From the IMG/VR virus record IMGVR_UViG_3300038424_000251, positions 62,001 through 126,000 of that record: a DNA stretch of 64,000 nt; one strand, 5' to 3'. This document shows, in pieces, positions 21,966-41,092 of this stretch. Each line of letters opens with the position of its first letter. Position 1 is the first letter of the stretch. The notes under the pieces are model-generated. The model saw nothing but the letters and a program-made list of their open reading frames with translations, made no database searches and was not told the DNA's origin. The position numbers and the translations under genes were made by a program.

Positions 21966-22172
21966 CTATAATTTTATTTCTAAAAGGTCTATGGTTGTAG
22001 ATGATTTATCATATATGATAATAGGTAATTTTTTGTTACTAATTCCTATTTCTTTTGACATTTCATCACCTATTTTATTGGCATATTTTTTATAATCTTC
22101 CTGTTTTCCGAAACGATTACTATCAAGACCTATCAATAAAACCGTCTTAGTTTTGGGTTTTATTTTTTTCAT
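21966..22172 (-). CDS. hypothetical protein
   Basis: 68 aa ORF coupled to the upstream GT. Confidence 0.55.
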   Translation of the reverse strand: MKKIKPKTKTVLLIGLDSNRFGKQEDYKKYANKIGDEMSKEIGISNKKLPIIIYDKSSTTIDLLEIKL

Positions 22173-23671
22173 ATATTTGCACTTTCTATTTGTTGTTTAA
22201 TTTTTTCTTGGTCAAATTTGGGAATTTCAAATCCCATTCCACCCGGCATCAAATTACCTACATAATCATTTTCGGTAAAAATACTAAAAGGTTTTACGGA
22301 CTTGAAATTATTCAAAGTATAATCCATACATTTGATAAATTCATTACACATGTTTTCAGAATTGATACCACCTTCATTCATTGCCCATCTTCTTCCTTCT
22401 TCACCACATTTTGTTCTTTTTTCATCTCCCATCAAATACCAGTACATTAATCCTTCAGCCGCATCTTCCCAACGTGTCATATCATCAAAAATATATGGTG
22501 TTGGAATAGAACCCTGAATGCATTGAACGAGTGGATATACAGGATACGCCCATATACCATGTTTCTTATATTTACCTATATTATTAGAACCAAAATGTAA
22601 ATCAAATTCTATGGGTGAACCATCATCCTTGGTTTGCCCTATTTGGTCTTGAAGTCCACCAGTTACAGCTGTAATAATAGGTGTGCCAGCCATAAGTGAT
22701 TCTGCAGTTGAAAGACCAAATCCTTCATTTGATGACAGATTAATAGTGACATCAGCAATGTTATATAATAAGTTTAAATCTTCTGGTGGATATTTTGCTG
22801 TTGAAAACATAACATCATAGTTTGGACAGAAGGCTTCTTTAACGGCCAGCAAATCTGTTCCAGCTTCTTGACGAACTTCTGTATGTAATATCAATATACA
22901 TTTTTCTGATTCTTCTTTTGGAAGATTGTCACAAAATGCTTTATAGGCTAACATGATATTACTTGTTCTCTTTCTTTGAACATTTCGTGAATTGTAAAAG
23001 ATTATGAAGTTATAATCCTTATTATGAAACATATCTTTGCGTCGTTTTTGTAAATTGGTATCATCTTTTGGAAGAGGATGGAATATTTTACTATTAATTC
23101 CATGAGGAACATAATGTAATACAGTCTTATTATCTGTATCTTTAGAATCGATGGTGGAAACTTTATCTGGTCCTAACACCCATTTGTTTATGTTATACGT
23201 TTGTTTGCTGATTGACATTAATAAATCACATGATTCGTAGTATGGTCTGTTGTACATTGGAAATGGGATATCATCCCAAATATTCAAGTAAGTTAAGGGC
23301 ATTTTAGAACGAATTTGCCTTTCTATAGCATATAACCATCCCCAGAATCTTGGATCTGTAAAATGAAGAAGTGCATCAGGTTTTTCTCTCTCAACAATAC
23401 TAAATAAAATTTCTTCATTTCCATAACCATCAACAGGATATAAAGTTACTTTTGCATCTTTAATGCCTGAAATTTGTGCGGTAGCTGCATCCATGTTGAC
23501 TATTTTACCTTTTTCAGGATGTTGAATTGCACCGGCAATCTGAACCCAATCATAATGTTTGACGGTCCCTAAAACGACTTCTCTTGTCATAGTAGCCACA
23601 CCTGAATGCATCCTCAAGTCATCGGACAAACATATTATTTTTGGTTTAGCCATAATGATTTTAAGAACCAA
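22169..23671 (-). CDS. GT4 glycosyltransferase
   Basis: HSGVA, VPHG, SRNVQRK, YNIADVTINLSSNEGFGLSTAESLMAGTP. Confidence 0.9.
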   Translation of the reverse strand: MVLKIIMAKPKIICLSDDLRMHSGVATMTREVVLGTVKHYDWVQIAGAIQHPEKGKIVNMDAATAQISGIKDAKVTLYPVDGYGNEEILFSIVEREKPDALLHFTDPRFWGWLYAIERQIRSKMPLTYLNIWDDIPFPMYNRPYYESCDLLMSISKQTYNINKWVLGPDKVSTIDSKDTDNKTVLHYVPHGINSKIFHPLPKDDTNLQKRRKDMFHNKDYNFIIFYNSRNVQRKRTSNIMLAYKAFCDNLPKEESEKCILILHTEVRQEAGTDLLAVKEAFCPNYDVMFSTAKYPPEDLNLLYNIADVTINLSSNEGFGLSTAESLMAGTPIITAVTGGLQDQIGQTKDDGSPIEFDLHFGSNNIGKYKKHGIWAYPVYPLVQCIQGSIPTPYIFDDMTRWEDAAEGLMYWYLMGDEKRTKCGEEGRRWAMNEGGINSENMCNEFIKCMDYTLNNFKSVKPFSIFTENDYVGNLMPGGMGFEIPKFDQEKIKQQIESANI

Positions 23672-23935: not shown

Positions 23936-24466
23936 TTATATTTTGGGAATGTGTTTCCACATTCGGCCTTTAGCAATCTTACATACTAATCCTCTGGAAA
24001 TATTGAATTTTTGACCTATTTGGGAATAAGAAAAATTGTTCTTTTTTATAAGTTTATTGATTTGAATAACTTTTTTATCATTTAATTTTTTAACAGATGA
24101 TTTCTGTTTTTTAGAAGTAGATTTTTCTATATTTTCTTTATGTGTTATGTATTCAAGATTTTTATAGAAATTATTTCTTGAATTTTCATCTTTGTGATTT
24201 ATATCAAATGAATTTTTACATAAAGGACAATATGAATTGCCTGAAAGAAATGCATCGGCAACAAGTTTGTGGACATTATAAGTTTTACTTTGACCATCTT
24301 TACATAAAGTGATAAGAGCGTAATTACCTTTTGAAGATTGTTTTAACATTTTAGGTTTTTTGTTGGCCACGAGTCTGTGAATATAAGAAATTCTTTTTAT
24401 GTTTCCTATAGAGGAAACTTGATACAGACCCTCATATCCCTTTACATCTTTCCAAATCTCATTCAT
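23936..24466 (-). CDS. NUMOD4-HNH homing endonuclease with C-terminal HTH
   Basis: EIWKDVKGYEGLYQVSSIG (NUMOD4), VHKLVADAF, INHKDENSRNN..NLEY. Confidence 0.9.
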   Translation of the reverse strand: MNEIWKDVKGYEGLYQVSSIGNIKRISYIHRLVANKKPKMLKQSSKGNYALITLCKDGQSKTYNVHKLVADAFLSGNSYCPLCKNSFDINHKDENSRNNFYKNLEYITHKENIEKSTSKKQKSSVKKLNDKKVIQINKLIKKNNFSYSQIGQKFNISRGLVCKIAKGRMWKHIPKI

Positions 24467-32289: not shown

Positions 32290-33012
32290 ATGAATTATCC
32301 AACTGAAAAAGAACTCAAAGACTTACTAGAATCAGACCTAGAACTTAATGCTATTGCTCAATCAGGCCCTTCTCTTGAAAAGGGACATCATGTTGCTCCA
32401 GAGGTTGAAAGAATTGTCCGTGAAAAATTGTATAATGCTTATGGGGGCAAATATGAAGAATTTATTGACATATATAAAATAGGTCCCAATAAAGGCCAAC
32501 CAAAACCTAAGAAGCAAGGAAAGGGAGTTAGAAAGGAACCAGATTACAAACTAAAAGATTTTCCTGACCAACCGGGTAATGTAAAAGCAGCATGTGTGTC
32601 TGAAAAAGATGGTGGACCTAATCTTTCATCTCTCTCTAAATACGCTACCCAATATATCGATGGTCAAATAAAAGCTTATTGGTTTCTTATTGTCAATTTA
32701 ATAGATGGTAAAGTTTCTGTCAACTTTCATGAATTGTTTAGTGAACTTCTTCCAGTTTGCCGATTTGATTTTGGTCATGGACAATTAATGCTTGATAAAA
32801 GTAGATATTACAAATGGTTAAAAGAACCAAATCATACAAAACTTTCGCCAACAGAATCTATTGATTATTTATTGGAACTTATATCCAAACCAAAAAGAGA
32901 AAAATTTTACGAAAAAAGAGAAAAGAAATATTCCAAACTTGAAGAGAATTTACTTAAGAAAAAATTGGCGTTGAAACCTTCTTATGAGAACACGGAAGCA
33001 CCAAAGGAATAA
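32290..33012 (+). CDS. putative type II restriction endonuclease
   Basis: EPDY…GNVK PD-(D/E)XK-like pattern; overlaps the MTase gene. Confidence 0.55.
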   Translation: MNYPTEKELKDLLESDLELNAIAQSGPSLEKGHHVAPEVERIVREKLYNAYGGKYEEFIDIYKIGPNKGQPKPKKQGKGVRKEPDYKLKDFPDQPGNVKAACVSEKDGGPNLSSLSKYATQYIDGQIKAYWFLIVNLIDGKVSVNFHELFSELLPVCRFDFGHGQLMLDKSRYYKWLKEPNHTKLSPTESIDYLLELISKPKREKFYEKREKKYSKLEENLLKKKLALKPSYENTEAPKE

Positions 33013-34594
33013 TAAACGTCAAATGGGTCAATTTATGACCCCCAGATTATTGGCACAGAAAGTAATAGGAAATGACATTAAGAAAGAAGAGAATATTTTA
33101 GAGCCATCTTTCGGTGATGGCTCTTTTATTATAGAGATAGCAAAAAAATTGATGCCCATATATGACTATAATCTGGATAATGTATTTGACCACATATACG
33201 GCATAGAATTAGACCCAATTCTTTATAACAAGTGTTTACTGAATATAAAAAAAGAATTTGGTAAAATACCTGAAAAACACCATCTTATTAATGAGGATTT
33301 TTTACTGCATAATTTTGATGGAATATTTTTCAAACATATTTTGGGAAATCCACCGTTTGGGGGAACTATACCAATTAAATATCAAAATAAATTAGAAGAA
33401 TTATATGGTAAAAGATATGGAAAAACTATAAAAAGAGAAAGTTATTCATATTTTTTAGTAAAAAGTGTAGGAATGTTGGAAGTAGAAGGAAAATTATCAT
33501 TTATATGTAGTGATACTTTTCTTACAATAAAAACCATGTGCGGATTACGGAATTTTTTAATGCAAGAAGGACTTGTGTCAATCAAAGAATTGCCTGAATT
33601 TTCAGAGGAAACCAATTATGGCATGGTAATTATTGATTTCATAAAATCAAATAAAAAAGAATCTAACTATATTGAAGTCTTTGGACAAAAAATCTTCAAA
33701 AAGGATATGGAAAAAATAGGGAATTTGTCTTGGGGAAATGTTAATGAATACATGAAATATTTTATAGGCCCTCATTTATCAACTTATATTATTTGTAGTA
33801 GTGGGATGACTATAGGAAAAAATGAATATTTTGTCAGAGAAATAGTTGATGATAAAATAATAGAGCCATACAACTTTACATTTTATAATAAACCGATTAC
33901 ATTAAAAGATGAATTGAATAGAGCACATTTTAATAAGTTATCAGAATCACAAAAAGTAAAAATCACACACAAAGAACAAATGGGAGAAACAAAAAAAGAT
34001 GTCAAAATTGAACCTTTAACAGTACCTGAATCAATAATGATTCCAAATGATTACTATAAATATTATAATAAAATGGTCCCCGGTGATGTATATGTAGAAC
34101 CAAAATATGTAATTTATTGGAGAAATGATGGTGAAGCGGTTAAAATGTTTAAAAAAAATGGAAATTGGTATCTTCATGGTATAGGGGGATTGCCCTTCTT
34201 TGGAAGAGAAGGAATTACATGGAATCTAATAGGTTCTAAAATCAACCCAAGATATTTGCCAAAAGGTTATATTTTGGATAGTGGGTGCCCATGTGGATTT
34301 CTGAAAAATGGTGTTGAAAAAGACGAATTATTCTTTATTATGGGGTGGCTTTTAACTTCCATGGCAAATGATATTCTCAAAAATGTTATAAATCATACCA
34401 GAAATATTCAGGGAAAAGATGTTGAAAAACTTCCATATCCTATATGGGTTTCAGATTCTACAAAACATAAAATAATAGATTATGTTAAGTCGATTATTGA
34501 TTTAAAGAAAAATGGAACTCCGTTGGAAAATAGTTATGTTGAAGTTCTAACAGAGTTATTTGATTTTCAGATTGAAAAAAGTGGTGTTGACTAA
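32984..34594 (+). CDS. amino (N6-adenine-type) DNA methyltransferase, gamma class (TaqI/Eco57I-like)
   Basis: GQFMTP, LEPSFGDGSF, YGIELD, GNPPF, C-terminal TRD. Confidence 0.9.
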   Translation: MRTRKHQRNNKRQMGQFMTPRLLAQKVIGNDIKKEENILEPSFGDGSFIIEIAKKLMPIYDYNLDNVFDHIYGIELDPILYNKCLLNIKKEFGKIPEKHHLINEDFLLHNFDGIFFKHILGNPPFGGTIPIKYQNKLEELYGKRYGKTIKRESYSYFLVKSVGMLEVEGKLSFICSDTFLTIKTMCGLRNFLMQEGLVSIKELPEFSEETNYGMVIIDFIKSNKKESNYIEVFGQKIFKKDMEKIGNLSWGNVNEYMKYFIGPHLSTYIICSSGMTIGKNEYFVREIVDDKIIEPYNFTFYNKPITLKDELNRAHFNKLSESQKVKITHKEQMGETKKDVKIEPLTVPESIMIPNDYYKYYNKMVPGDVYVEPKYVIYWRNDGEAVKMFKKNGNWYLHGIGGLPFFGREGITWNLIGSKINPRYLPKGYILDSGCPCGFLKNGVEKDELFFIMGWLLTSMANDILKNVINHTRNIQGKDVEKLPYPIWVSDSTKHKIIDYVKSIIDLKKNGTPLENSYVEVLTELFDFQIEKSGVD

Positions 34595-34615
34595 ATACAT
34601 TATTTGTGATATAAT
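34587..34615 (+). promoter_or_regulatory. strong sigma70-like promoter TTGACT-17-TATAAT (TG-extended), 8 nt before the ATG at 34624
   Basis: Near-consensus motif. Confidence 0.8.
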
Positions 34616-34623
34616 GTACTATT

Positions 34624-34812
34624 ATGAATATGACACCTTTAATCAATCGACAAGCGATTAAACGAATGGCTCTTAAATTGAGTAAATCAATCAGAGCAGG
34701 TAGATTTACTAGAGTTGGTAGTGAATTTTTTATTCGCGTGAATTCACGGTTGGATGCAATTATTCGTGAAGAAGTTCACAAACATCCAAGCATTGGAAAG
34801 ACATTGAAATGA
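34624..34812 (+). CDS. small basic protein with histone-fold-like pattern
   Basis: LINRQAIKRMA (a1) … RVGSEF (L1) … long a2 … GKTL (L2); 62 aa. Confidence 0.55.
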   Translation: MNMTPLINRQAIKRMALKLSKSIRAGRFTRVGSEFFIRVNSRLDAIIREEVHKHPSIGKTLK

Positions 34813-35150
34813 AAAAACATGGGAAAACATATAAGCCTGTAGGTAGGTTAAAAATTCCTACAACGATTCCTATCTTGATTTCAGGAGTAGGTATGATTAA
34901 TACAAATAAAAATATGAAAATAACAATTGAATGTGAAATGAAAGATAAGTGGGTTCCTCATTTTTTGGGAATGCTTTATCATATGGAAAAATTGGGTAAA
35001 CTGGGAAGTTCAAGAAGAATATCAATATATGCAGATGGTGATGGCGATTTTAGACCAAGATTTAAGTGTATTCAATCAAGTGAACCACTTCCTTTGCCTG
35101 CTAAACCTGTTGAGGAAATTGATGGCAATACGATATTTGATGCTGGTTAA
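34809..35150 (+). CDS. hypothetical protein (YADGDGDFRP motif)
   Basis: ORF in operon; the true start may be downstream (MKITIEC). Confidence 0.6.
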   Translation: MKKHGKTYKPVGRLKIPTTIPILISGVGMINTNKNMKITIECEMKDKWVPHFLGMLYHMEKLGKLGSSRRISIYADGDGDFRPRFKCIQSSEPLPLPAKPVEEIDGNTIFDAG

Positions 35151-35152
35151 TT

Positions 35153-35638
35153 ATGTCAGATAAAATTTTCAATTTTGATGACCAATTAAAAATCGGTAAC
35201 AATGGAGAAACCGATTTTATGAGGATTTATGAAAAGCTTGAACCTAAAAAAAGTTTAGATAATTTTCGTATTGACTTTCTTCTTAATAATGGTAAGACTA
35301 TAGAATTAAAGACTGATAATTATGACATGAATAAAACCCCAAATTTTTTCATGGAACAATATACAGTTTCAGGAAATAAAAGTGATTTGGGTGGTCCTTG
35401 GCGTTCAAAAGAACATAACGTTGATTATTTTGTTTATTATTTTATTAAAAATAAAGTATTCTTTTGGTTTGACCCTGTTTCATTGTGTGAATGTTTGGAT
35501 AAGTTCATAAGAGAAAATGAACTCAAACAAATTTCAATACCAAATGTAGATAAGAATGGTGGATGTTATAAAGCGTTGGGATTTAAGATTCCAAGAGATA
35601 GTTTAAAATCTGTTCTTCTTAAAGAACATAAAATATGA
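35153..35638 (+). CDS. PD-(D/E)XK nuclease-like protein
   Basis: GE..F, IDF…TIELKTD…NFFME, GGPW, DYFVYYF. Confidence 0.7.
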   Translation: MSDKIFNFDDQLKIGNNGETDFMRIYEKLEPKKSLDNFRIDFLLNNGKTIELKTDNYDMNKTPNFFMEQYTVSGNKSDLGGPWRSKEHNVDYFVYYFIKNKVFFWFDPVSLCECLDKFIRENELKQISIPNVDKNGGCYKALGFKIPRDSLKSVLLKEHKI

Positions 35639-35868
35639 AAATAAAAAGTAAAAAATTAAGTAAAATTGAAAAAGAAATTGGTAAATGTATGGAAAAGTAT
35701 ATAGGAGAGCCTATAGATGATATCACTTTGTCAAAAATTGAAAAATCAGTCCAAAAATTAATAAATAATTGTTTTCCAAATCAATATAAAGTTATAATGG
35801 ACAGGTCAAATAATTCTCCAAAAAATATAGACAATCAAATTTTAAATATTGACCTAATTTTAAAATGA
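35635..35868 (+). CDS. mini-protein resembling the contractile tail sheath C-terminal domain
   Basis: IGEPIDDIT…YKVIMDRSNNSPKNIDNQILNIDLILK compared with the sheath consensus FEPND..T…V.CDE.NNTP..ID.N.L..DI. Confidence 0.55.
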   Translation: MKIKSKKLSKIEKEIGKCMEKYIGEPIDDITLSKIEKSVQKLINNCFPNQYKVIMDRSNNSPKNIDNQILNIDLILK

Positions 35869-36662
35869 AGTTTGATTACACAATCAAAGAAGTAAATAAA
35901 TTTACCGCAGCTAAATTAGTTCAACAACATCACTATTCCAAGGTAATGCCTAAACTTACCAAGCATTATCTTGGTGTATTTATTGGTGATAAGATGGTTG
36001 GTGTACTAACTCTTGGATGGGGAACGCAACCCCGCCAAACTATCAATAAACTTTTTCCCGGTCTTACAACCAAGGACTATTATGAAATTGGTAAGATGTG
36101 TATGCTTCCTGAAATGCCCAAAAATTCTGAATCACAAATGTTATCTGCAATTATCAAATGGATAAAAATACATTTGCCAGAAAAGCTATTTCTATATACA
36201 TGGGCTGATGGTATTGTTGGTAAAGTTGGTTATGTGTATCAATCAGCAAATTTCTATTATGGTGGTTTCATTTGGACGGATATTTATATTAGCCCTGATG
36301 GGGAGAAAATTCATCCAAGAACCTCACATAATCTTTGTATAGAGAATGCTAAGTTTTGTAATAAAGAAAAGATATTCTGGTTGACCCGAGATTTTATGAA
36401 ATTGAAAGGAATCACTAGAATAAGAGGAAAACAATTCAGATATATTATGCCTTTATCTAAAATGGCTAGAAAAATGCTTGACAAATCTACTGTTAGATGG
36501 ACAATAGATTATCCTAAAGAAGAAGATTTAGAATGGAAAAAACAAATTGATGGTGGTTATGAACTAATTAAAGAATTGCCAAAAATTGATTTGGGAATGG
36601 TCAATATAAATAAAAAGAATGTCAATTCTTATAAAAGGGAAGAAAATCAATTTTTTGGATAA
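35865..36662 (+). CDS. Mom-like (GNAT fold) DNA modification protein
   Basis: HHYS, VGVLTLG, EIGKMC…PKNSESQMLS, TWAD….GYVYQSANFYYGG. Confidence 0.8.
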   Translation: MKFDYTIKEVNKFTAAKLVQQHHYSKVMPKLTKHYLGVFIGDKMVGVLTLGWGTQPRQTINKLFPGLTTKDYYEIGKMCMLPEMPKNSESQMLSAIIKWIKIHLPEKLFLYTWADGIVGKVGYVYQSANFYYGGFIWTDIYISPDGEKIHPRTSHNLCIENAKFCNKEKIFWLTRDFMKLKGITRIRGKQFRYIMPLSKMARKMLDKSTVRWTIDYPKEEDLEWKKQIDGGYELIKELPKIDLGMVNINKKNVNSYKREENQFFG

Positions 36663-36673
36663 TAAAAGGAAAT

Positions 36674-36991
36674 ATGCATTATAAAGATGGAACAGAAGCA
36701 ATGGTTGGAGATATAGCTCGTGGTAAAGGATTTAATATTCCTTATGAAATTGTAGCTCCAGTGACAAAATTAAAACCTGAAGGTGGTAAATGCAATCTTG
36801 AACTTAAAGTTGTTAAAGCTACACTGATACCGGGATACAATGATGGTGATGGTGGAATCGGATGGATTCCCGAACAATGGACTTTTGATATGATTGACGA
36901 ATATGGTGACGTTTCTGAATTTGAATTGATTTACCGAAAAGGTTGGAAGAGAGTTCAATCCCGTAATCTTGTTTGGGAAAAAAGCTGTTAA
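36674..36991 (+). CDS. hypothetical protein (MHYKDG.EA.VGD motif)
   Basis: SD-like AAGGA upstream; 105 aa ORF. Confidence 0.65.
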   Translation: MHYKDGTEAMVGDIARGKGFNIPYEIVAPVTKLKPEGGKCNLELKVVKATLIPGYNDGDGGIGWIPEQWTFDMIDEYGDVSEFELIYRKGWKRVQSRNLVWEKSC

Positions 36992-37002
36992 TTATAGTTT
37001 TA

Positions 37003-37548
37003 ATGAGTGAAAAATTTACAATAGGTTATAAATCCATTTTTGATACACCTGCTGATGCTTATGTCAATACCATTAACTGTGTGGGTATAATGGGCGCTGG
37101 TATTGCTTTGGAGTTTAAGAAACGTTATCCTTTGATGTTTGAACATTATAAAGAACTATGCTCTAAACATGCAATTCGTCCCGGTGATTGTTACACTTAT
37201 TTTGACCACGAACATCAGATTTATCTTCTTGGATTAGCAGTAAAAAATGATTGGCATTATTGGAGTACTCTTGAATGGATTGAATCATCAATTAAATCGT
37301 TAAAACTTGCTATATTGGAGAATGACATTAAATCAGTAAATATGCCTTTACTCGGAGGAAAGAATGGAAGAAGAGGCCCATATGGAAAAGTGGAGGGATT
37401 TACACCGCCGCCAGACAGAATTGAATTGAAAAAATTGATTGAAGAAGAACTTAAACCATTCGCTGAAAAATTTCAGATAATTATCAATTTGTGTTTACCT
37501 GATGAACAACCAAAAAAACAAGAAGTTACATTGGATTCATTTATATGA
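37003..37548 (+). CDS. macro domain ADP-ribose hydrolase (DarG/Poa1p-like)
   Basis: VNTINCVGIMGAGIALEFKKRYP, K..W…S.LEWI, MPLLG. Confidence 0.85.
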   Translation: MSEKFTIGYKSIFDTPADAYVNTINCVGIMGAGIALEFKKRYPLMFEHYKELCSKHAIRPGDCYTYFDHEHQIYLLGLAVKNDWHYWSTLEWIESSIKSLKLAILENDIKSVNMPLLGGKNGRRGPYGKVEGFTPPPDRIELKKLIEEELKPFAEKFQIIINLCLPDEQPKKQEVTLDSFI

Positions 37549-37967
37549 ACAGAGAAATAAAATTTAGAGTTTGGGATGATGTTGAAAAGAAAATGCTTTA
37601 TCCAAAGGATATTTTTAATGAACAGAGTATTTTTTATGAAGATGATGAAAATGGTAATCTTTTGATAAATAGAGTTATTGATAGTTATGGTGTAAGGCGA
37701 AGTCTGGCCATCCAACAATATACCGGTCTTAAAGATAAACATAGCAAAGAAATTTATGAAGGAGATATCATAGAAACTATATACCAATCCAAAGGTTCAA
37801 TAATTTACTTAAACGAATTTGGTGGATTTAGAATTATAGTCAATGAAATATGTCTTCCTATTGTGACGGTTAGATTTATTGATGAAAAACCAAATGGATT
37901 ATTATTAGTTGTTGATAAAATAATAGGTAACATTTTTGAAACACCAGAATTACTAAATAAAATATAA
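37545..37967 (+). CDS. YopX family protein
   Basis: REIKFRVWD…QYTGLKDK..KEIYEGDI…IGNIFETPELL. Confidence 0.9.
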   Translation: MNREIKFRVWDDVEKKMLYPKDIFNEQSIFYEDDENGNLLINRVIDSYGVRRSLAIQQYTGLKDKHSKEIYEGDIIETIYQSKGSIIYLNEFGGFRIIVNEICLPIVTVRFIDEKPNGLLLVVDKIIGNIFETPELLNKI

Positions 37968-40552: not shown

Positions 40553-41092
40553 GTGAAAAATCTATTATACAGAACAAAAACGTACTTAGTAGGTCCAATG
40601 CAATATAAGAACGGGGAAGATTGGAGAAATAAAATTACGGTTATATTGAAAAAAATGGGGGTTGTAGTTTTCAATCCTTATCACAAACCATTCTTAAAAG
40701 ACATAAAAGAAGACGATAATACAAGAAAACATATTAGTGAATTGATGGAAGAAGAAAAATACGATGAAGTTCAAGAGAGAATGAGAGAAGTTCGTGCGTA
40801 TGATTTAAACTTGGTTGATAGGTCAGATTTTATTATAGCATATATTGACCCAAAAACTCCCACTTTTGGTGCAGTAGAAGAATTGGTCACTGCTGTAAGA
40901 ATGAAGCGGCCAACTTTCATTGCTGTTGAAGGGGGTAAAAAACTTTGCCCTTATTGGTTACTTGGGATGTTTCCACACAAATACATCTATGATAGCGTAG
41001 ATAATATATCAAAGATGTTGATTAAAATTGATAATGGTAAAAAAGAAATTGACTCTGATAGATGGCGTTTATTAAAAAAAGAATATAGATAA
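40553..41092 (+). CDS. nucleoside 2-deoxyribosyltransferase-like / nucleotide N-glycosidase
   Basis: YLVGPM, WR, VFNP, DL..VDRSD.IIA, T.G…EL..A. Confidence 0.8.
   Translation: MKNLLYRTKTYLVGPMQYKNGEDWRNKITVILKKMGVVVFNPYHKPFLKDIKEDDNTRKHISELMEEEKYDEVQERMREVRAYDLNLVDRSDFIIAYIDPKTPTFGAVEELVTAVRMKRPTFIAVEGGKKLCPYWLLGMFPHKYIYDSVDNISKMLIKIDNGKKEIDSDRWRLLKKEYR

What the first reader, a model, noticed from the sequence alone, without database searches (positions are those of the whole stretch)
34587..34812. Histone-fold-like mini-protein behind one of the strongest promoters
Seen: a 62-aa basic protein with a1 (LINRQAIKRMA), RV-G-S-E-F loop, long a2 and GKTL end. This parallels the RV(S) and (R)KT(I/V) DNA-contact loops of archaeal and bacterial histones but lacks a3. 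It is the first gene after a near-consensus promoter. Inference: a phage histone that coats phage DNA (protection from nucleases) or silences the host nucleoid.
Basis: inference. Interest (0 to 1): 0.7.

Follow-up and report, generated by a model that had tools for sequence, protein, structure and literature searches.

The report
Minimal phage histone-fold DNA-binding protein
A 62-residue, very basic protein of an uncultured 365-kb peat-bog phage is a real but stripped-down histone (two helices, two loops, no third helix) from a large, unnamed, almost purely viral family; it most likely pairs up and binds DNA early in infection, though no experiment shows that yet.

Summary
ORF 34624-34812 (+) encodes a 62-aa protein (pI 11.8, net charge +10) directly behind TTGACT-17-TGaTATAAT.

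It is a real gene. It has 247 cluster representatives in 1.84 billion proteins, nearly all viral or metagenomic, none named and none in Pfam or PHROGs.

It is a histone fold:
- The family profile hits one PDB sequence significantly, the alpha3-truncated archaeal histone HTkC (E 7.5e-5; hhalign 95.8%, E 7e-9).
- The AF2 model (pLDDT 96) ranks HTkC, Leptospira HLp and Bdellovibrio HBb at the top of 48,161 chains.
- The homodimer prediction scores 0.88 against 0.00 for controls, with handshake contacts.
- A natural tandem member matches only single-chain histone doublets.

It differs from known histones. It has no alpha3 at all (82% of members stop within 2 residues of GxTL), no R-D clamp, and a basic 6-residue insert before L1.

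DNA binding rests on conserved R30, K59/T60, N8/R9/K13, the charge and a WLM-protease fusion; it is inferred. Coating phage DNA or silencing the host is untested.

The gene heads an early operon in the replication and DNA-modification module.

Phage alpha3 histone-fold proteins were catalogued in 2024-25, so I file this as a new variant of a known kind.

The parts
34587..34615 (+). Sigma-70-type promoter: -35 TTGACT (34587-34592, overlapping the stop codon of the upstream methylase gene), a 17-nt spacer with extended -10 TG (34607-34608), and -10 TATAAT (34610-34615).
   Evidence: scores it 11/12 plus TG, the best site in 30-40 kb. One search shows the motif TTGACTAA..TGATAKAAT conserved upstream of orthologues in L006-L014. 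One search gives the genome-wide ranking. Function as a promoter is inferred; there are no RNA data.
34616..34623 (+). An 8-nt gap between the -10 hexamer and the ATG, with no Shine-Dalgarno sequence. The mRNA is predicted to be leaderless or nearly so.
   Evidence: One search gives the sequence. One search shows the same 8-nt spacing in L006 and L009-L012. Searches show this is a genome-wide habit: 39 of 86 best sites have an ATG 6-11 nt after the -10, p 1.6e-14. This is an inference.
34624..34812 (+). Coding sequence of the 62-aa alpha3-less histone-fold protein (P0001), stop codon included. An alternative ATG lies at 34630.
34636..34692 (+). N-terminal strand PLIN (residues 5-8, which pairs with the partner chain) and helix alpha1 (residues 9-23). 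Conserved N8, R/K9 and K/R13 lie on the first turns, at the positions equivalent to the alpha1 DNA contacts of HBb.
   Evidence: DSSP; contacts 5-8 with 5-8' and alpha1 with alpha2'; conservation; HBb contacts T8, S9, K10, K12.
34693..34719 (+). Loop L1 (residues 24-32). It holds the family-specific basic insert R24-A-G-R27-F28 and then T29-R30-V31-G32, the homologue of the histone RVS motif.
   Evidence: the hhalign gap of 6 residues against HTkC falls here, and R30-V31 align with HTkC R22-V23. R30 98%, F28 96%, V31 95%, R24 85%; residues 28, 30 and 31 touch residues 60 and 61 of the partner.
34720..34782 (+). Helix alpha2 (residues 33-53), which crosses its partner's alpha2 antiparallel at residue 43.
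   Evidence: One search gives contacts 43:43, 39:47, 39:46 and 35:50.
34783..34809 (+). Loop L2 and the C-terminus (H54-P-S-I-G58-K59-T60-L61-K62). This is the KT motif of histones. The protein ends here, so there is no alpha3.
   Evidence: T60 100%, G58 99%, P55 96%, S56 93%, K/R59 80%; 133 of 162 members end 0-2 residues after GxT[LIV]. G58, K59, T60 and L61 align with HTkC G50, R51, T53 and L54.
34809..35150 (+). Next gene (113 aa, phrog_10928, function unknown). Its ATG overlaps the histone gene's TGA (ATGA), so the two are probably co-transcribed and translationally coupled. It is the first of a tight run that continues through Mom, Macro and YopX.

Best explanation
P0001 is a minimal member of the alpha3-truncated histone superfamily, made of alpha1, L1, alpha2 and L2 with nothing after L2. 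Two copies interlock in the classic antiparallel handshake. That creates two L1-L2' sites, each presenting R30 (L1) beside K59/T60 (L2' of the partner), plus a central site formed by the first turns of the two alpha1 helices (N8, R9, K13) and the family-specific basic insert (R24, R27). With about +20 charge per dimer, it most likely binds the sugar-phosphate backbone of double-stranded DNA at minor grooves without sequence specificity and bends it. This is what the solved relatives HBb (dimer), HLp and HTkC (tetramers) do. The gene is transcribed by host RNA polymerase from a near-consensus sigma-70-type promoter, probably as a leaderless mRNA. It is the first gene of an operon inside the replication and DNA-modification module: PolB, N6-methylase, then this gene, then Mom, Macro, YopX and the clamp loader. 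It therefore acts on intracellular DNA early in infection and is not a virion component. What is shown: the gene is real, the family is conserved, it is homologous to histones, and the fold and dimer are predicted. What is inferred: DNA binding, timing of expression and leaderless translation. What remains open: whether it organises or protects phage DNA or compacts the host nucleoid, and whether dimers assemble further.
For: Homology:
- The profile of 101 members against 177,635 PDB sequences gives one significant hit, the alpha3 histone HTkC (9f2c), at E 7.5e-5.
- hhalign of the family against the HTkC family gives 95.8% and E 7.2e-9 over 52 columns spanning alpha1 to L2.
- Among the 100 nearest ESM-Atlas clusters, the only named ones are PF00808 and PF09123 histone families.

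Fold:
- The AF2 model has pLDDT 96.1.
- VIA-align against 48,161 chains ranks HTkC first (Z 5.5, 53 of 58 residues, rmsd 2.1), HLp third (5.2) and HBb fifth (5.1). Rows 1-32 are all histone-fold proteins.
- All 13 Foldseek PDB hits are histones.

Dimer:
- ipSAE is 0.88 against a best control of 0.00. In calibration the mark was reached by 20/30 solved homodimers and 1/23 single chains. The three runs agree in >=96% of contacts and pLDDT is >=88.
- The contacts are alpha2:alpha2' crossing at residue 43, L1 (28, 30, 31) with L2' (60, 61), and alpha1 against the C-terminal half of alpha2'.
- The natural tandem member P0011 models (pLDDT 83.8) as a pseudo-dimer. Its ten best PDB matches are all single-chain histone doublets: Melbournevirus Z 8.2, Spt3 7.5, fused H2A-H2B 6.5, 1wwi 6.2, SOS 5.8, HMk 5.3 and Aq328 5.1.

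DNA binding (inferred):
- The most conserved positions are the L1/L2 residues and the alpha1 basic residues that contact DNA in HBb.
- The core net charge averages +7.9 across the family, range +3 to +14.
- One member is fused to a WLM metalloprotease domain at E 1.4e-18. To my knowledge Wss1/Spartan-type proteases are DNA-dependent.

Context:
- The gene lies in replication or recombination neighbourhoods in unrelated phages: PolB, PolA plus primase, ThyA, ligase, ERF.
- The promoter is conserved upstream of the orthologues.
- No HU-family or DUF1931 gene was found elsewhere in the 365-kb genome.
Against: - There is no experimental or transcript evidence; no RNA run could be listed.
- The structural scores are modest in absolute terms. 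Z is 5-5.5, and the tool warns that Z<8 can reflect a common helical arrangement. Foldseek E-values are 3-9.
- The complex predictor may score histone-like pairs from memory.
- The family lacks the R-T-D clamp and the alpha3 residue (R57 in HBb) that contributes DNA contacts.
- K59 is replaced by V in 14% of members.
- No Pfam histone model detects any of the 101 members.
- Neighbourhoods outside the jumbo-phage clade are heterogeneous.
- Some histone-fold proteins, such as TAFs, do not bind DNA.
Confidence: 0.65

Rival explanations
1. It is a replisome accessory factor. A histone-fold dimer tethers the phage DNA polymerase to duplex DNA, in the manner of the Dpb3-Dpb4 histone-fold subunits of eukaryotic Pol epsilon. 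It would not be a general chromatin protein.
For: In every member of the jumbo-phage clade (L002-L015) the gene follows the family-B polymerase gene. It is directly adjacent or separated by one small ORF in L007-L015; the window's own clade has a 240-aa ORF and a methylase cassette inserted between them. In an unrelated lineage (L025, L033) longer family members lie immediately upstream of a family-A polymerase and a DUF5906 primase-helicase. The Dpb4-Dpb3 fold appears among the structural matches (5y27_B, Z 3.6).
Against: About a dozen other lineages have no polymerase within 4.5 kb. Adjacency within one clade counts as a single observation. No interaction was tested. The Dpb3/4 match ranks far below the free-standing prokaryotic histones.
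Confidence: 0.12
2. It is a sequence-specific regulator. The dimer recognises particular sites, for example early promoters or the origin, and acts as a repressor or timing switch.
For: It is a small dimeric basic protein and the first gene behind a strong early promoter. The genome carries many near-identical early promoters that a repressor could target.
Against: All characterised single-domain prokaryotic histones bind non-specifically through backbone contacts. The conserved residues are backbone- or minor-groove-contact positions. No repeated operator-like motif was searched for or seen near the gene.
Confidence: 0.1
3. It is a protein-protein or RNA-binding module with a histone-like scaffold that does not bind dsDNA, as with TAF-type histone folds.
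For: TAF4/TAF12 and other TFIID/SAGA folds score as well as true histones (Z 5.1-5.2). The R-D clamp and alpha3 are missing. The high positive charge would equally suit RNA.
Against: The L1 arginine and L2 KT motif, which TAF-type folds generally lack, are the most conserved residues. The only sequence-level relative is a DNA-wrapping histone. The WLM-protease fusion suggests a DNA-sensing role.
Confidence: 0.08
4. It is a chance open frame in AT-rich DNA and not a gene.
For: 62-codon frames are common at 30% GC, and one search lists many in this stretch.
Against: There are 247 homologous cluster representatives with an invariant motif. The model has pLDDT 96. Position and promoter are conserved in related phages.
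Confidence: 0.01

Closest known systems
HTkC, the face-to-face (FtF) alpha3-truncated histone of Thermococcus kodakarensis (PDB 9F2C; Schwab et al. 2024, PMC11390915; bioRxiv 10.64898/2025.12.06.692711)
   Same: It is the only significant sequence relative with a solved structure (E 7.5e-5; hhalign 95.8%) and the best structural match (Z 5.5 over 53 of 58 residues). It is about the same size, at 59 against 62 aa. The RVS...KTL framework is the same: the L1 arginine to L2 threonine spacing is 30 residues here and 31 in HTkC. The position aligned with HTkC R45, which is critical for the tetramer, is K53 here and R in about half of the family.
   Different: HTkC keeps a one-turn alpha3 (5 residues after KTL) and the R of RKT; here the chain stops at KTL(K) and the R is replaced by G. 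The phage family has a 6-residue basic insert before L1. HTkC is cellular, is a toroidal tetramer and wraps DNA; the oligomeric state of the phage protein beyond the dimer was not tested.
Bacterial histones HBb/Bd0055 (8CMP) of Bdellovibrio and HLp (9QT0) of Leptospira
   Same: They are single histone-fold proteins of about 56-58 residues with a short alpha3, and they rank 5th and 3rd of 48,161 chains (Z 5.1, 5.2). DNA contact positions in HBb (first turn of alpha1, L1, and K52-T53 in L2) coincide with the conserved N8/R9/K13, T29-R30 and K59-T60 here. Both bind DNA non-specifically: HBb bends it as a dimer, and HLp wraps about 60 bp as a tetramer.
   Different: Their Pfam model DUF1931 (PF09123) detects neither P0001 nor any of the 101 family members. 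They keep the R51-D58 clamp and the alpha3 residue R57, which are absent here. They are major chromosomal proteins of cells and are not phage genes.
Phage-encoded alpha3 histone-fold proteins already catalogued: the 'phage histones' of Schwab et al. 2024 and the VTTH, VHHH, VFFH and BBVH clusters of Liu et al. (hLife 2025, PMC13681535)
   Same: They are alpha3-type histone folds encoded by tailed phages from metagenomes. They were predicted by AlphaFold to dimerise or tetramerise and were proposed to bend or bridge DNA. None of the phage alpha3 types has been tested experimentally. VFFH is described as FtF-like with basic N-terminal tails of 5-40 residues, which some members of this family also have.
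   Different: Schwab's phage histones and VTTH carry a C-terminal tetramerisation helix and a logo with K10, G17, R30 and K49. This family ends at L2 and has a different signature, FTRVS...RHPSxGKTL. I could not check whether any member was included in those catalogues, because their sequence lists are not held. A narrow FtF HMM scores family members at only 12-26 bits, too low for a metagenome-scale cut-off, so most were probably missed.
Single-chain histone doublets (Melbournevirus/Marseillevirus doublets, Methanopyrus HMk, Thermus 1WWI, Aquifex Aq328)
   Same: Natural tandem members of this family, such as P0011, model as the same pseudo-dimer. The top ten structural matches are all such doublets.
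   Different: The window's protein is a singlet. The ~105-115-aa members appear from the alignment to be asymmetric: copy 1 keeps L1 and loses L2, while copy 2 loses alpha1 and keeps L2. This is an inference and was not modelled.

Membership tests
Histone fold, alpha3-truncated superfamily (Schwab et al. 2024) | Helix-loop-helix-loop core (alpha1-L1-alpha2-L2) with alpha3 reduced to 3-4 residues or fewer. | tested here: met
   The AF2 model has H9-23, a loop, H33-53 and a tail, at pLDDT 96. Alpha3 is wholly absent: 82% of members end 0-2 residues after GxT[LIV].
Histone fold, alpha3-truncated superfamily (Schwab et al. 2024) | Detectable sequence homology to an established member. | tested here: met
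   The family profile against PDB hits HTkC at E 7.5e-5, the only hit below 0.09. hhalign gives 95.8% and E 7.2e-9.
Histone fold, alpha3-truncated superfamily (Schwab et al. 2024) | Shortened alpha2, 4-5 residues shorter than in nucleosomal histones. | tested here: met
   Alpha2 is 21 residues. The L1-Arg to L2-Thr spacing is 30, against 31 in the alpha3 histone HTkC. The comparison with nucleosomal histones rests and general knowledge.
Histone fold (general) | Antiparallel handshake dimer with paired L1-L2' loops. | tested here: met
   This is prediction only. ipSAE is 0.88 against a best control of 0.00 (20/30 solved homodimers and 1/23 single chains reach the mark). Contacts are 43:43, 39:47 and 30:60'. 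The tandem member matches histone doublets.
Histone fold (general) | R-T-D motif (RxTxxxxD; the R-D clamp between L2 and alpha3). | tested here: not met
   L2 is G58-K59-T60. There is no arginine two residues before T60, and no alpha3 and hence no aspartate. Schwab's phage histones also lack this motif.
Histone fold (general) | Recognition by the curated Pfam models PF00808 (CBFD_NFYB_HMF) or PF09123 (DUF1931). | tested here: not met
   There was no hit at E<=10 for P0001. None of the 101 members hit either model at E<=1. PF09123 found nothing in the genome.
Histone fold (general) | Binds double-stranded DNA. | not testable with these tools
   This is inferred only, from conserved contact positions, charge and the WLM fusion.
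Face-to-face (FtF) histones | Toroidal tetramer held by a conserved arginine (HTkC R45) that salt-bridges to the partner's C-terminal carboxylate. | tested here: inconclusive
   The aligned position 53 is K in P0001 and R in 78 of 162 members. The C-terminus is tightly length-constrained. No tetramer was modelled.
'Phage histones' sensu Schwab et al. 2024, and VTTH of Liu et al. | Alpha3 histone fold followed by a C-terminal helix that forms a tetramerisation domain. | tested here: not met
   The protein ends at L2. Their conserved logo positions K10, G17, R30 and K49 do not fit this family's spacing.
HU/IHF-type nucleoid proteins (the usual phage and bacterial 'histone-like' proteins) | Bac_DNA_binding fold (PF00216). 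| tested here: not met
   There is no Pfam hit and no PF00216 match anywhere in the genome. The model is all-helical.

The most novel reading that the evidence does not exclude
This is the founding example of a large, phage-specific lineage of 'two-helix' histones with at least 247 clusters at 50% identity. The lineage has shed alpha3 and the R-D clamp, yet still forms handshake dimers that package or shield replicating phage DNA. In this case the DNA is chemically modified (Mom, N6-methylase and glycosyltransferases lie nearby), which would amount to a viral chromatin in bacteria. Within phages the lineage has also re-run the singlet to tandem to asymmetric pseudo-dimer path known from eukaryotic and giant-virus histones.
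Probability: 0.25. Interest if true: 0.75.

Novelty: new variant of a known kind. Interest (0 to 1): 0.58.

Why it matters
Histones in bacteria and their viruses have been recognised only since about 2023, and no phage-encoded alpha3-type histone has been characterised at the bench. This family is abundant in uncultured phages and invisible to Pfam and PHROGs. It is the smallest histone-fold unit I could find a comparison for, at 62 residues with no alpha3. If it binds DNA, three things follow. It would define the minimal histone. It would give a candidate explanation for how some large phages organise or protect their replicating genomes without HU. It would also offer a natural series of singlet, tandem and asymmetric doublet forms for studying how histone doublets evolve. 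At 7 kDa the protein is easy to make, and the solved relatives supply ready assays.

Tried and rejected
- Single-sequence searches gave nothing useful. Pfam and PHROGs at E<=10 returned no family. PDB phmmer returned only a chance NtrC match at E 0.68.
- Pfam on all 101 members gave only scattered chance hits.
- GenBank phage records (50,697) held no DNA match. There was no tblastn match with P0001 or three divergent members, so no cultured phage carrying the family was found.
- The search for related loci with the broad alignment failed because no stretch was conserved enough. A narrower alignment worked.
- Foldseek alone was inconclusive. E-values were 3-9 for the monomer and 0.14-3 for the tandem model, although the top hits were histones. 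The exhaustive VIA-align searches were needed.
- Expression could not be checked. 24 peat or wetland DNA runs hold the locus, but no RNA run was listed.
- Cluster look-ups gave no names or accessions beyond 'hypothetical protein'.
- Neighbourhoods of divergent members from the look-up of encoding contigs were mostly unannotated small ORFs.
- I considered identity with Schwab's 'phage histone' family and rejected it on architecture and logo. Inclusion in Liu et al.'s VFFH cluster could not be checked because no supplementary text is held.
- I considered a virion or packaging role and set it aside. The gene sits in an early, sigma-70-driven replication module, and no structural genes are adjacent.
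Full report
**The observation**

The window lies in a 365,299-bp virus record that CheckV rates 100% complete. It has about 33% GC and recurs in at least 24 peat and wetland metagenome runs from 2017-2021. It has pI 11.8 and net charge +10.

Upstream lies TTGACT, a 17-nt spacer and TATAAT with a TG extended -10, at 34587-34615. It scores 11/12 and is the best site in the surrounding 10 kb. Genome-wide it is one of 86 sites scoring at least 11/12. The -35 hexamer overlaps the stop codon of the upstream Eco57I-like N6-methylase gene.

**It is a real, conserved gene**

Nine near-identical to 76%-identical proteins of 60-62 aa exist in metagenomes. An exhaustive phmmer search of 1.84 billion cluster representatives found 247 relatives at E<=1e-3.

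An alignment of 101 short members gives the signature LINRxxVKxxAL...RxGKFTRVSxxF...VxRHPSxGKTLK. T60 is invariant, and L17, F28, R30, V31, P55, S56 and G58 are at least 90% conserved. No source names the family. UniProt representatives are 'uncharacterized', and neither Pfam nor PHROGs detects P0001 or any of the 101 members.

The family is essentially viral:
- 32 loci were found in IMG/VR.
- Only 3 MAGs among 185,579 species genomes matched by a pattern-limited scan.
- No GenBank phage record matched.

**It is a histone fold**

- *Sequence.* The family profile searched against every PDB sequence gives one significant hit, chain 9f2c_A (E 7.5e-5; the next hit is at 0.09). This is HTkC, the face-to-face alpha3-truncated histone of Thermococcus kodakarensis. 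Profile-profile comparison with an alignment of HTkC orthologues gives 95.8% probability and E 7.2e-9 over 52 columns, from the start of alpha1 to KTL. R30-V31 align with the histone RVS motif, and G58, K59, T60 and L61 align with G50, R51, T53 and L54 of HTkC's GRKTL.
- *Structure.* AlphaFold2 with the family alignment gives pLDDT 96.1, with helices at 9-23 and 33-53. An exhaustive alignment to 48,161 PDB chains ranks HTkC first (Z 5.5, 53 of 58 residues, rmsd 2.1). The Leptospira histone HLp is third (Z 5.2) and Bdellovibrio HBb fifth (Z 5.1). Rows 1-32 are all histone-fold proteins. The absolute Z values are modest for so small a protein. The weight lies in the specificity of the ranking and its agreement with the sequence result.
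- *Quaternary structure.* The homodimer prediction scored 0.88 against 0.00 for the best of three controls. In calibration the mark was reached by 20 of 30 solved homodimers and 1 of 23 single chains. Run agreement was at least 96% and pLDDT at least 88. The contacts are those of a handshake: alpha2 crosses alpha2' at its midpoint (43:43, 39:47, 35:50), L1 residues 28, 30 and 31 pair with L2' residues 60 and 61, and alpha1 packs on the C-terminal half of alpha2'. The tool notes that such a pass may reflect memory of solved histone dimers.
- *An independent check.* The family contains natural tandem duplications. The model of one (P0011, pLDDT 83.8) has L1-L2' bridges. Its ten best PDB matches are all single-chain histone doublets, from Melbournevirus at Z 8.2 down to Aq328 at 5.1, followed by a drop to unrelated folds.

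**How it differs from known histones**

- The chain stops at L2. Of 162 members with the motif, 133 end within two residues after GxT[LIV], so alpha3 is absent and not merely short.
- The R-D clamp cannot exist. There is a glycine where the arginine would be, and no alpha3 aspartate.
- A 6-residue insert carrying conserved R24 and K/R27 precedes L1.
- The position aligned with HTkC R45 is K53 here and arginine in 78 of 162 members. In HTkC this residue bridges to the partner's C-terminal carboxylate and is required for the tetramer. An FtF-like tetramer is therefore possible but untested.

**Is it the 'phage histone' already described?**

Schwab et al. defined phage histones as an alpha3 fold plus a C-terminal tetramerisation helix, with logo positions K10, G17, R30 and K49. 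That architecture and spacing do not fit this family.

Liu et al. catalogued further phage clusters (VTTH, VHHH, VFFH, BBVH) from the same HMMs. I could not see their sequences. A narrow FtF HMM scores members of this family at only 12-26 bits, so most were probably below a metagenome-scale threshold.

Phage alpha3 histone-fold proteins are thus a known kind, none of them tested at the bench. This family is a distinct, more reduced variant.

**Function**

DNA binding is an inference. The residues that contact DNA in HBb are the first turn of alpha1, K12, the L1 residues T23-S24, and K52-T53 of L2. They correspond to the conserved N8, R/K9, K/R13, T29-R30 and K59-T60 here. The whole family is strongly basic, with a mean core charge of +7.9. 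One member is fused to a WLM metalloprotease domain; to my knowledge such proteases depend on DNA binding. The solved relatives all bind DNA non-specifically and bend or wrap it.

Context places the protein in DNA metabolism and not in the virion:
- In the jumbo-phage clade the gene always follows the family-B polymerase and precedes Mom, Macro, YopX and the clamp loader.
- In unrelated phages it sits beside PolA plus primase, thymidylate synthase and ligase, or ERF recombinase.
- No HU or DUF1931 gene was found elsewhere in the genome.

Whether it organises or shields phage DNA, compacts the host nucleoid, or serves the replisome cannot be decided here. I give the Dpb3/Dpb4-like replisome idea about 0.12, because polymerase adjacency holds in only two lineages.

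**Expression**

The promoter motif is conserved upstream of orthologues down to 61% identity. In most of them it ends exactly 8 nt before the ATG, with no Shine-Dalgarno sequence. Across the genome, 39 of the 86 best promoter-like sites have an ATG 6-11 nt downstream, where about 10 are expected (p 1.6e-14), and 34 of those open ORFs of at least 40 aa. The gene is therefore probably translated from a leaderless early mRNA. No RNA run could be listed to test this.

**Verdict**

The histone-fold reading is supported. The proposed biological role is plausible but untested. I file this as a new variant of a known kind, of moderate to high interest.

Noticed in passing
whole genome G000 (window = C1:62001-126000); examples in the window at 24466 (-), 28997 (+), 34624 (+) and 63736 (-): Leaderless gene starts look like a habit of this jumbo phage. 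Of 86 sigma-70-like sites with >=11/12 match, 39 have an ATG 6-11 nt after the -10 hexamer, where about 10 are expected (p 1.6e-14). 34 of these open ORFs of >=40 aa, with peaks at 6 and 9 nt.
   Followed up: partly
window 32290-34594, compared with L007-L015: A cassette of a 240-aa ORF with no Pfam or PHROG hit plus an Eco57I-like N6-adenine methylase is inserted between the PolB gene and the histone-fold gene in this phage's own clade only. In relatives the histone gene follows PolB directly or after one small ORF.
   Followed up: partly
L006:2332-5954 and L008:1964-5787: In two related phages the family-B DNA polymerase gene is split into two ORFs. The inserted DNA carries an HNH/endonuclease-VII-type gene (phrog_3322, E 6e-26), presumably a homing endonuclease or intron-like insertion. 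The same endonuclease family occurs near the histone-fold gene in L023 and L026.
   Followed up: partly
proteins P0012, P0013, P0030, P0063 and about 20 others (alignments A4, A5): Members of ~105-115 aa look like asymmetric pseudo-dimers. The first half keeps alpha1 and L1 (FTRVS) but has lost L2. The second half has lost alpha1, keeps only a degenerate L1 (FxT), and retains RHPSxGKTL. Only one complete L1-L2 site would then remain per molecule. Three members (P0011, P0053, P0148) are full tandems.
   Followed up: partly
protein P0042 (191 aa) and its cluster mate P0165 (274 aa): A WLM-type metalloprotease domain (PF08325, E 1.4e-18; HExxH present) is fused N-terminal to the histone-fold domain.
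   Followed up: no
proteins P0029, P0045, P0085, P0114, P0147; locus L025:5683-6300: A recurrent unannotated N-terminal domain of about 100 aa, with a conserved PPHNLTPxEAT stretch, is fused to the histone-fold domain. In L025 this gene lies directly upstream of a family-A polymerase and a DUF5906 primase-helicase.
   Followed up: no
L037:5001-8179 (Verrucomicrobiae MAG, 1.9-Mb contig): One of the few chromosomal copies of the family sits next to a CDC48-like AAA+ ATPase gene and a TIR-domain gene, so it may lie in a defence island or an integrated element.
   Followed up: no
window 35865-37967, 40553-41092 and 22169-23671: The histone-fold gene lies among DNA-modification and counter-defence-type genes: a Mom-like protein (E 3.5e-54), a Macro domain, YopX, a nucleoside 2-deoxyribosyltransferase-like protein, and a GT4 glycosyltransferase of the 'conflict systems' type. 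This suggests the phage DNA is chemically modified.
   Followed up: no
window 35635-35868: A 77-aa ORF in the same operon gives weak PHROG matches (E 3e-5) to the C-terminal end of tail-sheath families. That is odd for a replication-module gene and is probably a chance or fragment match.
   Followed up: no
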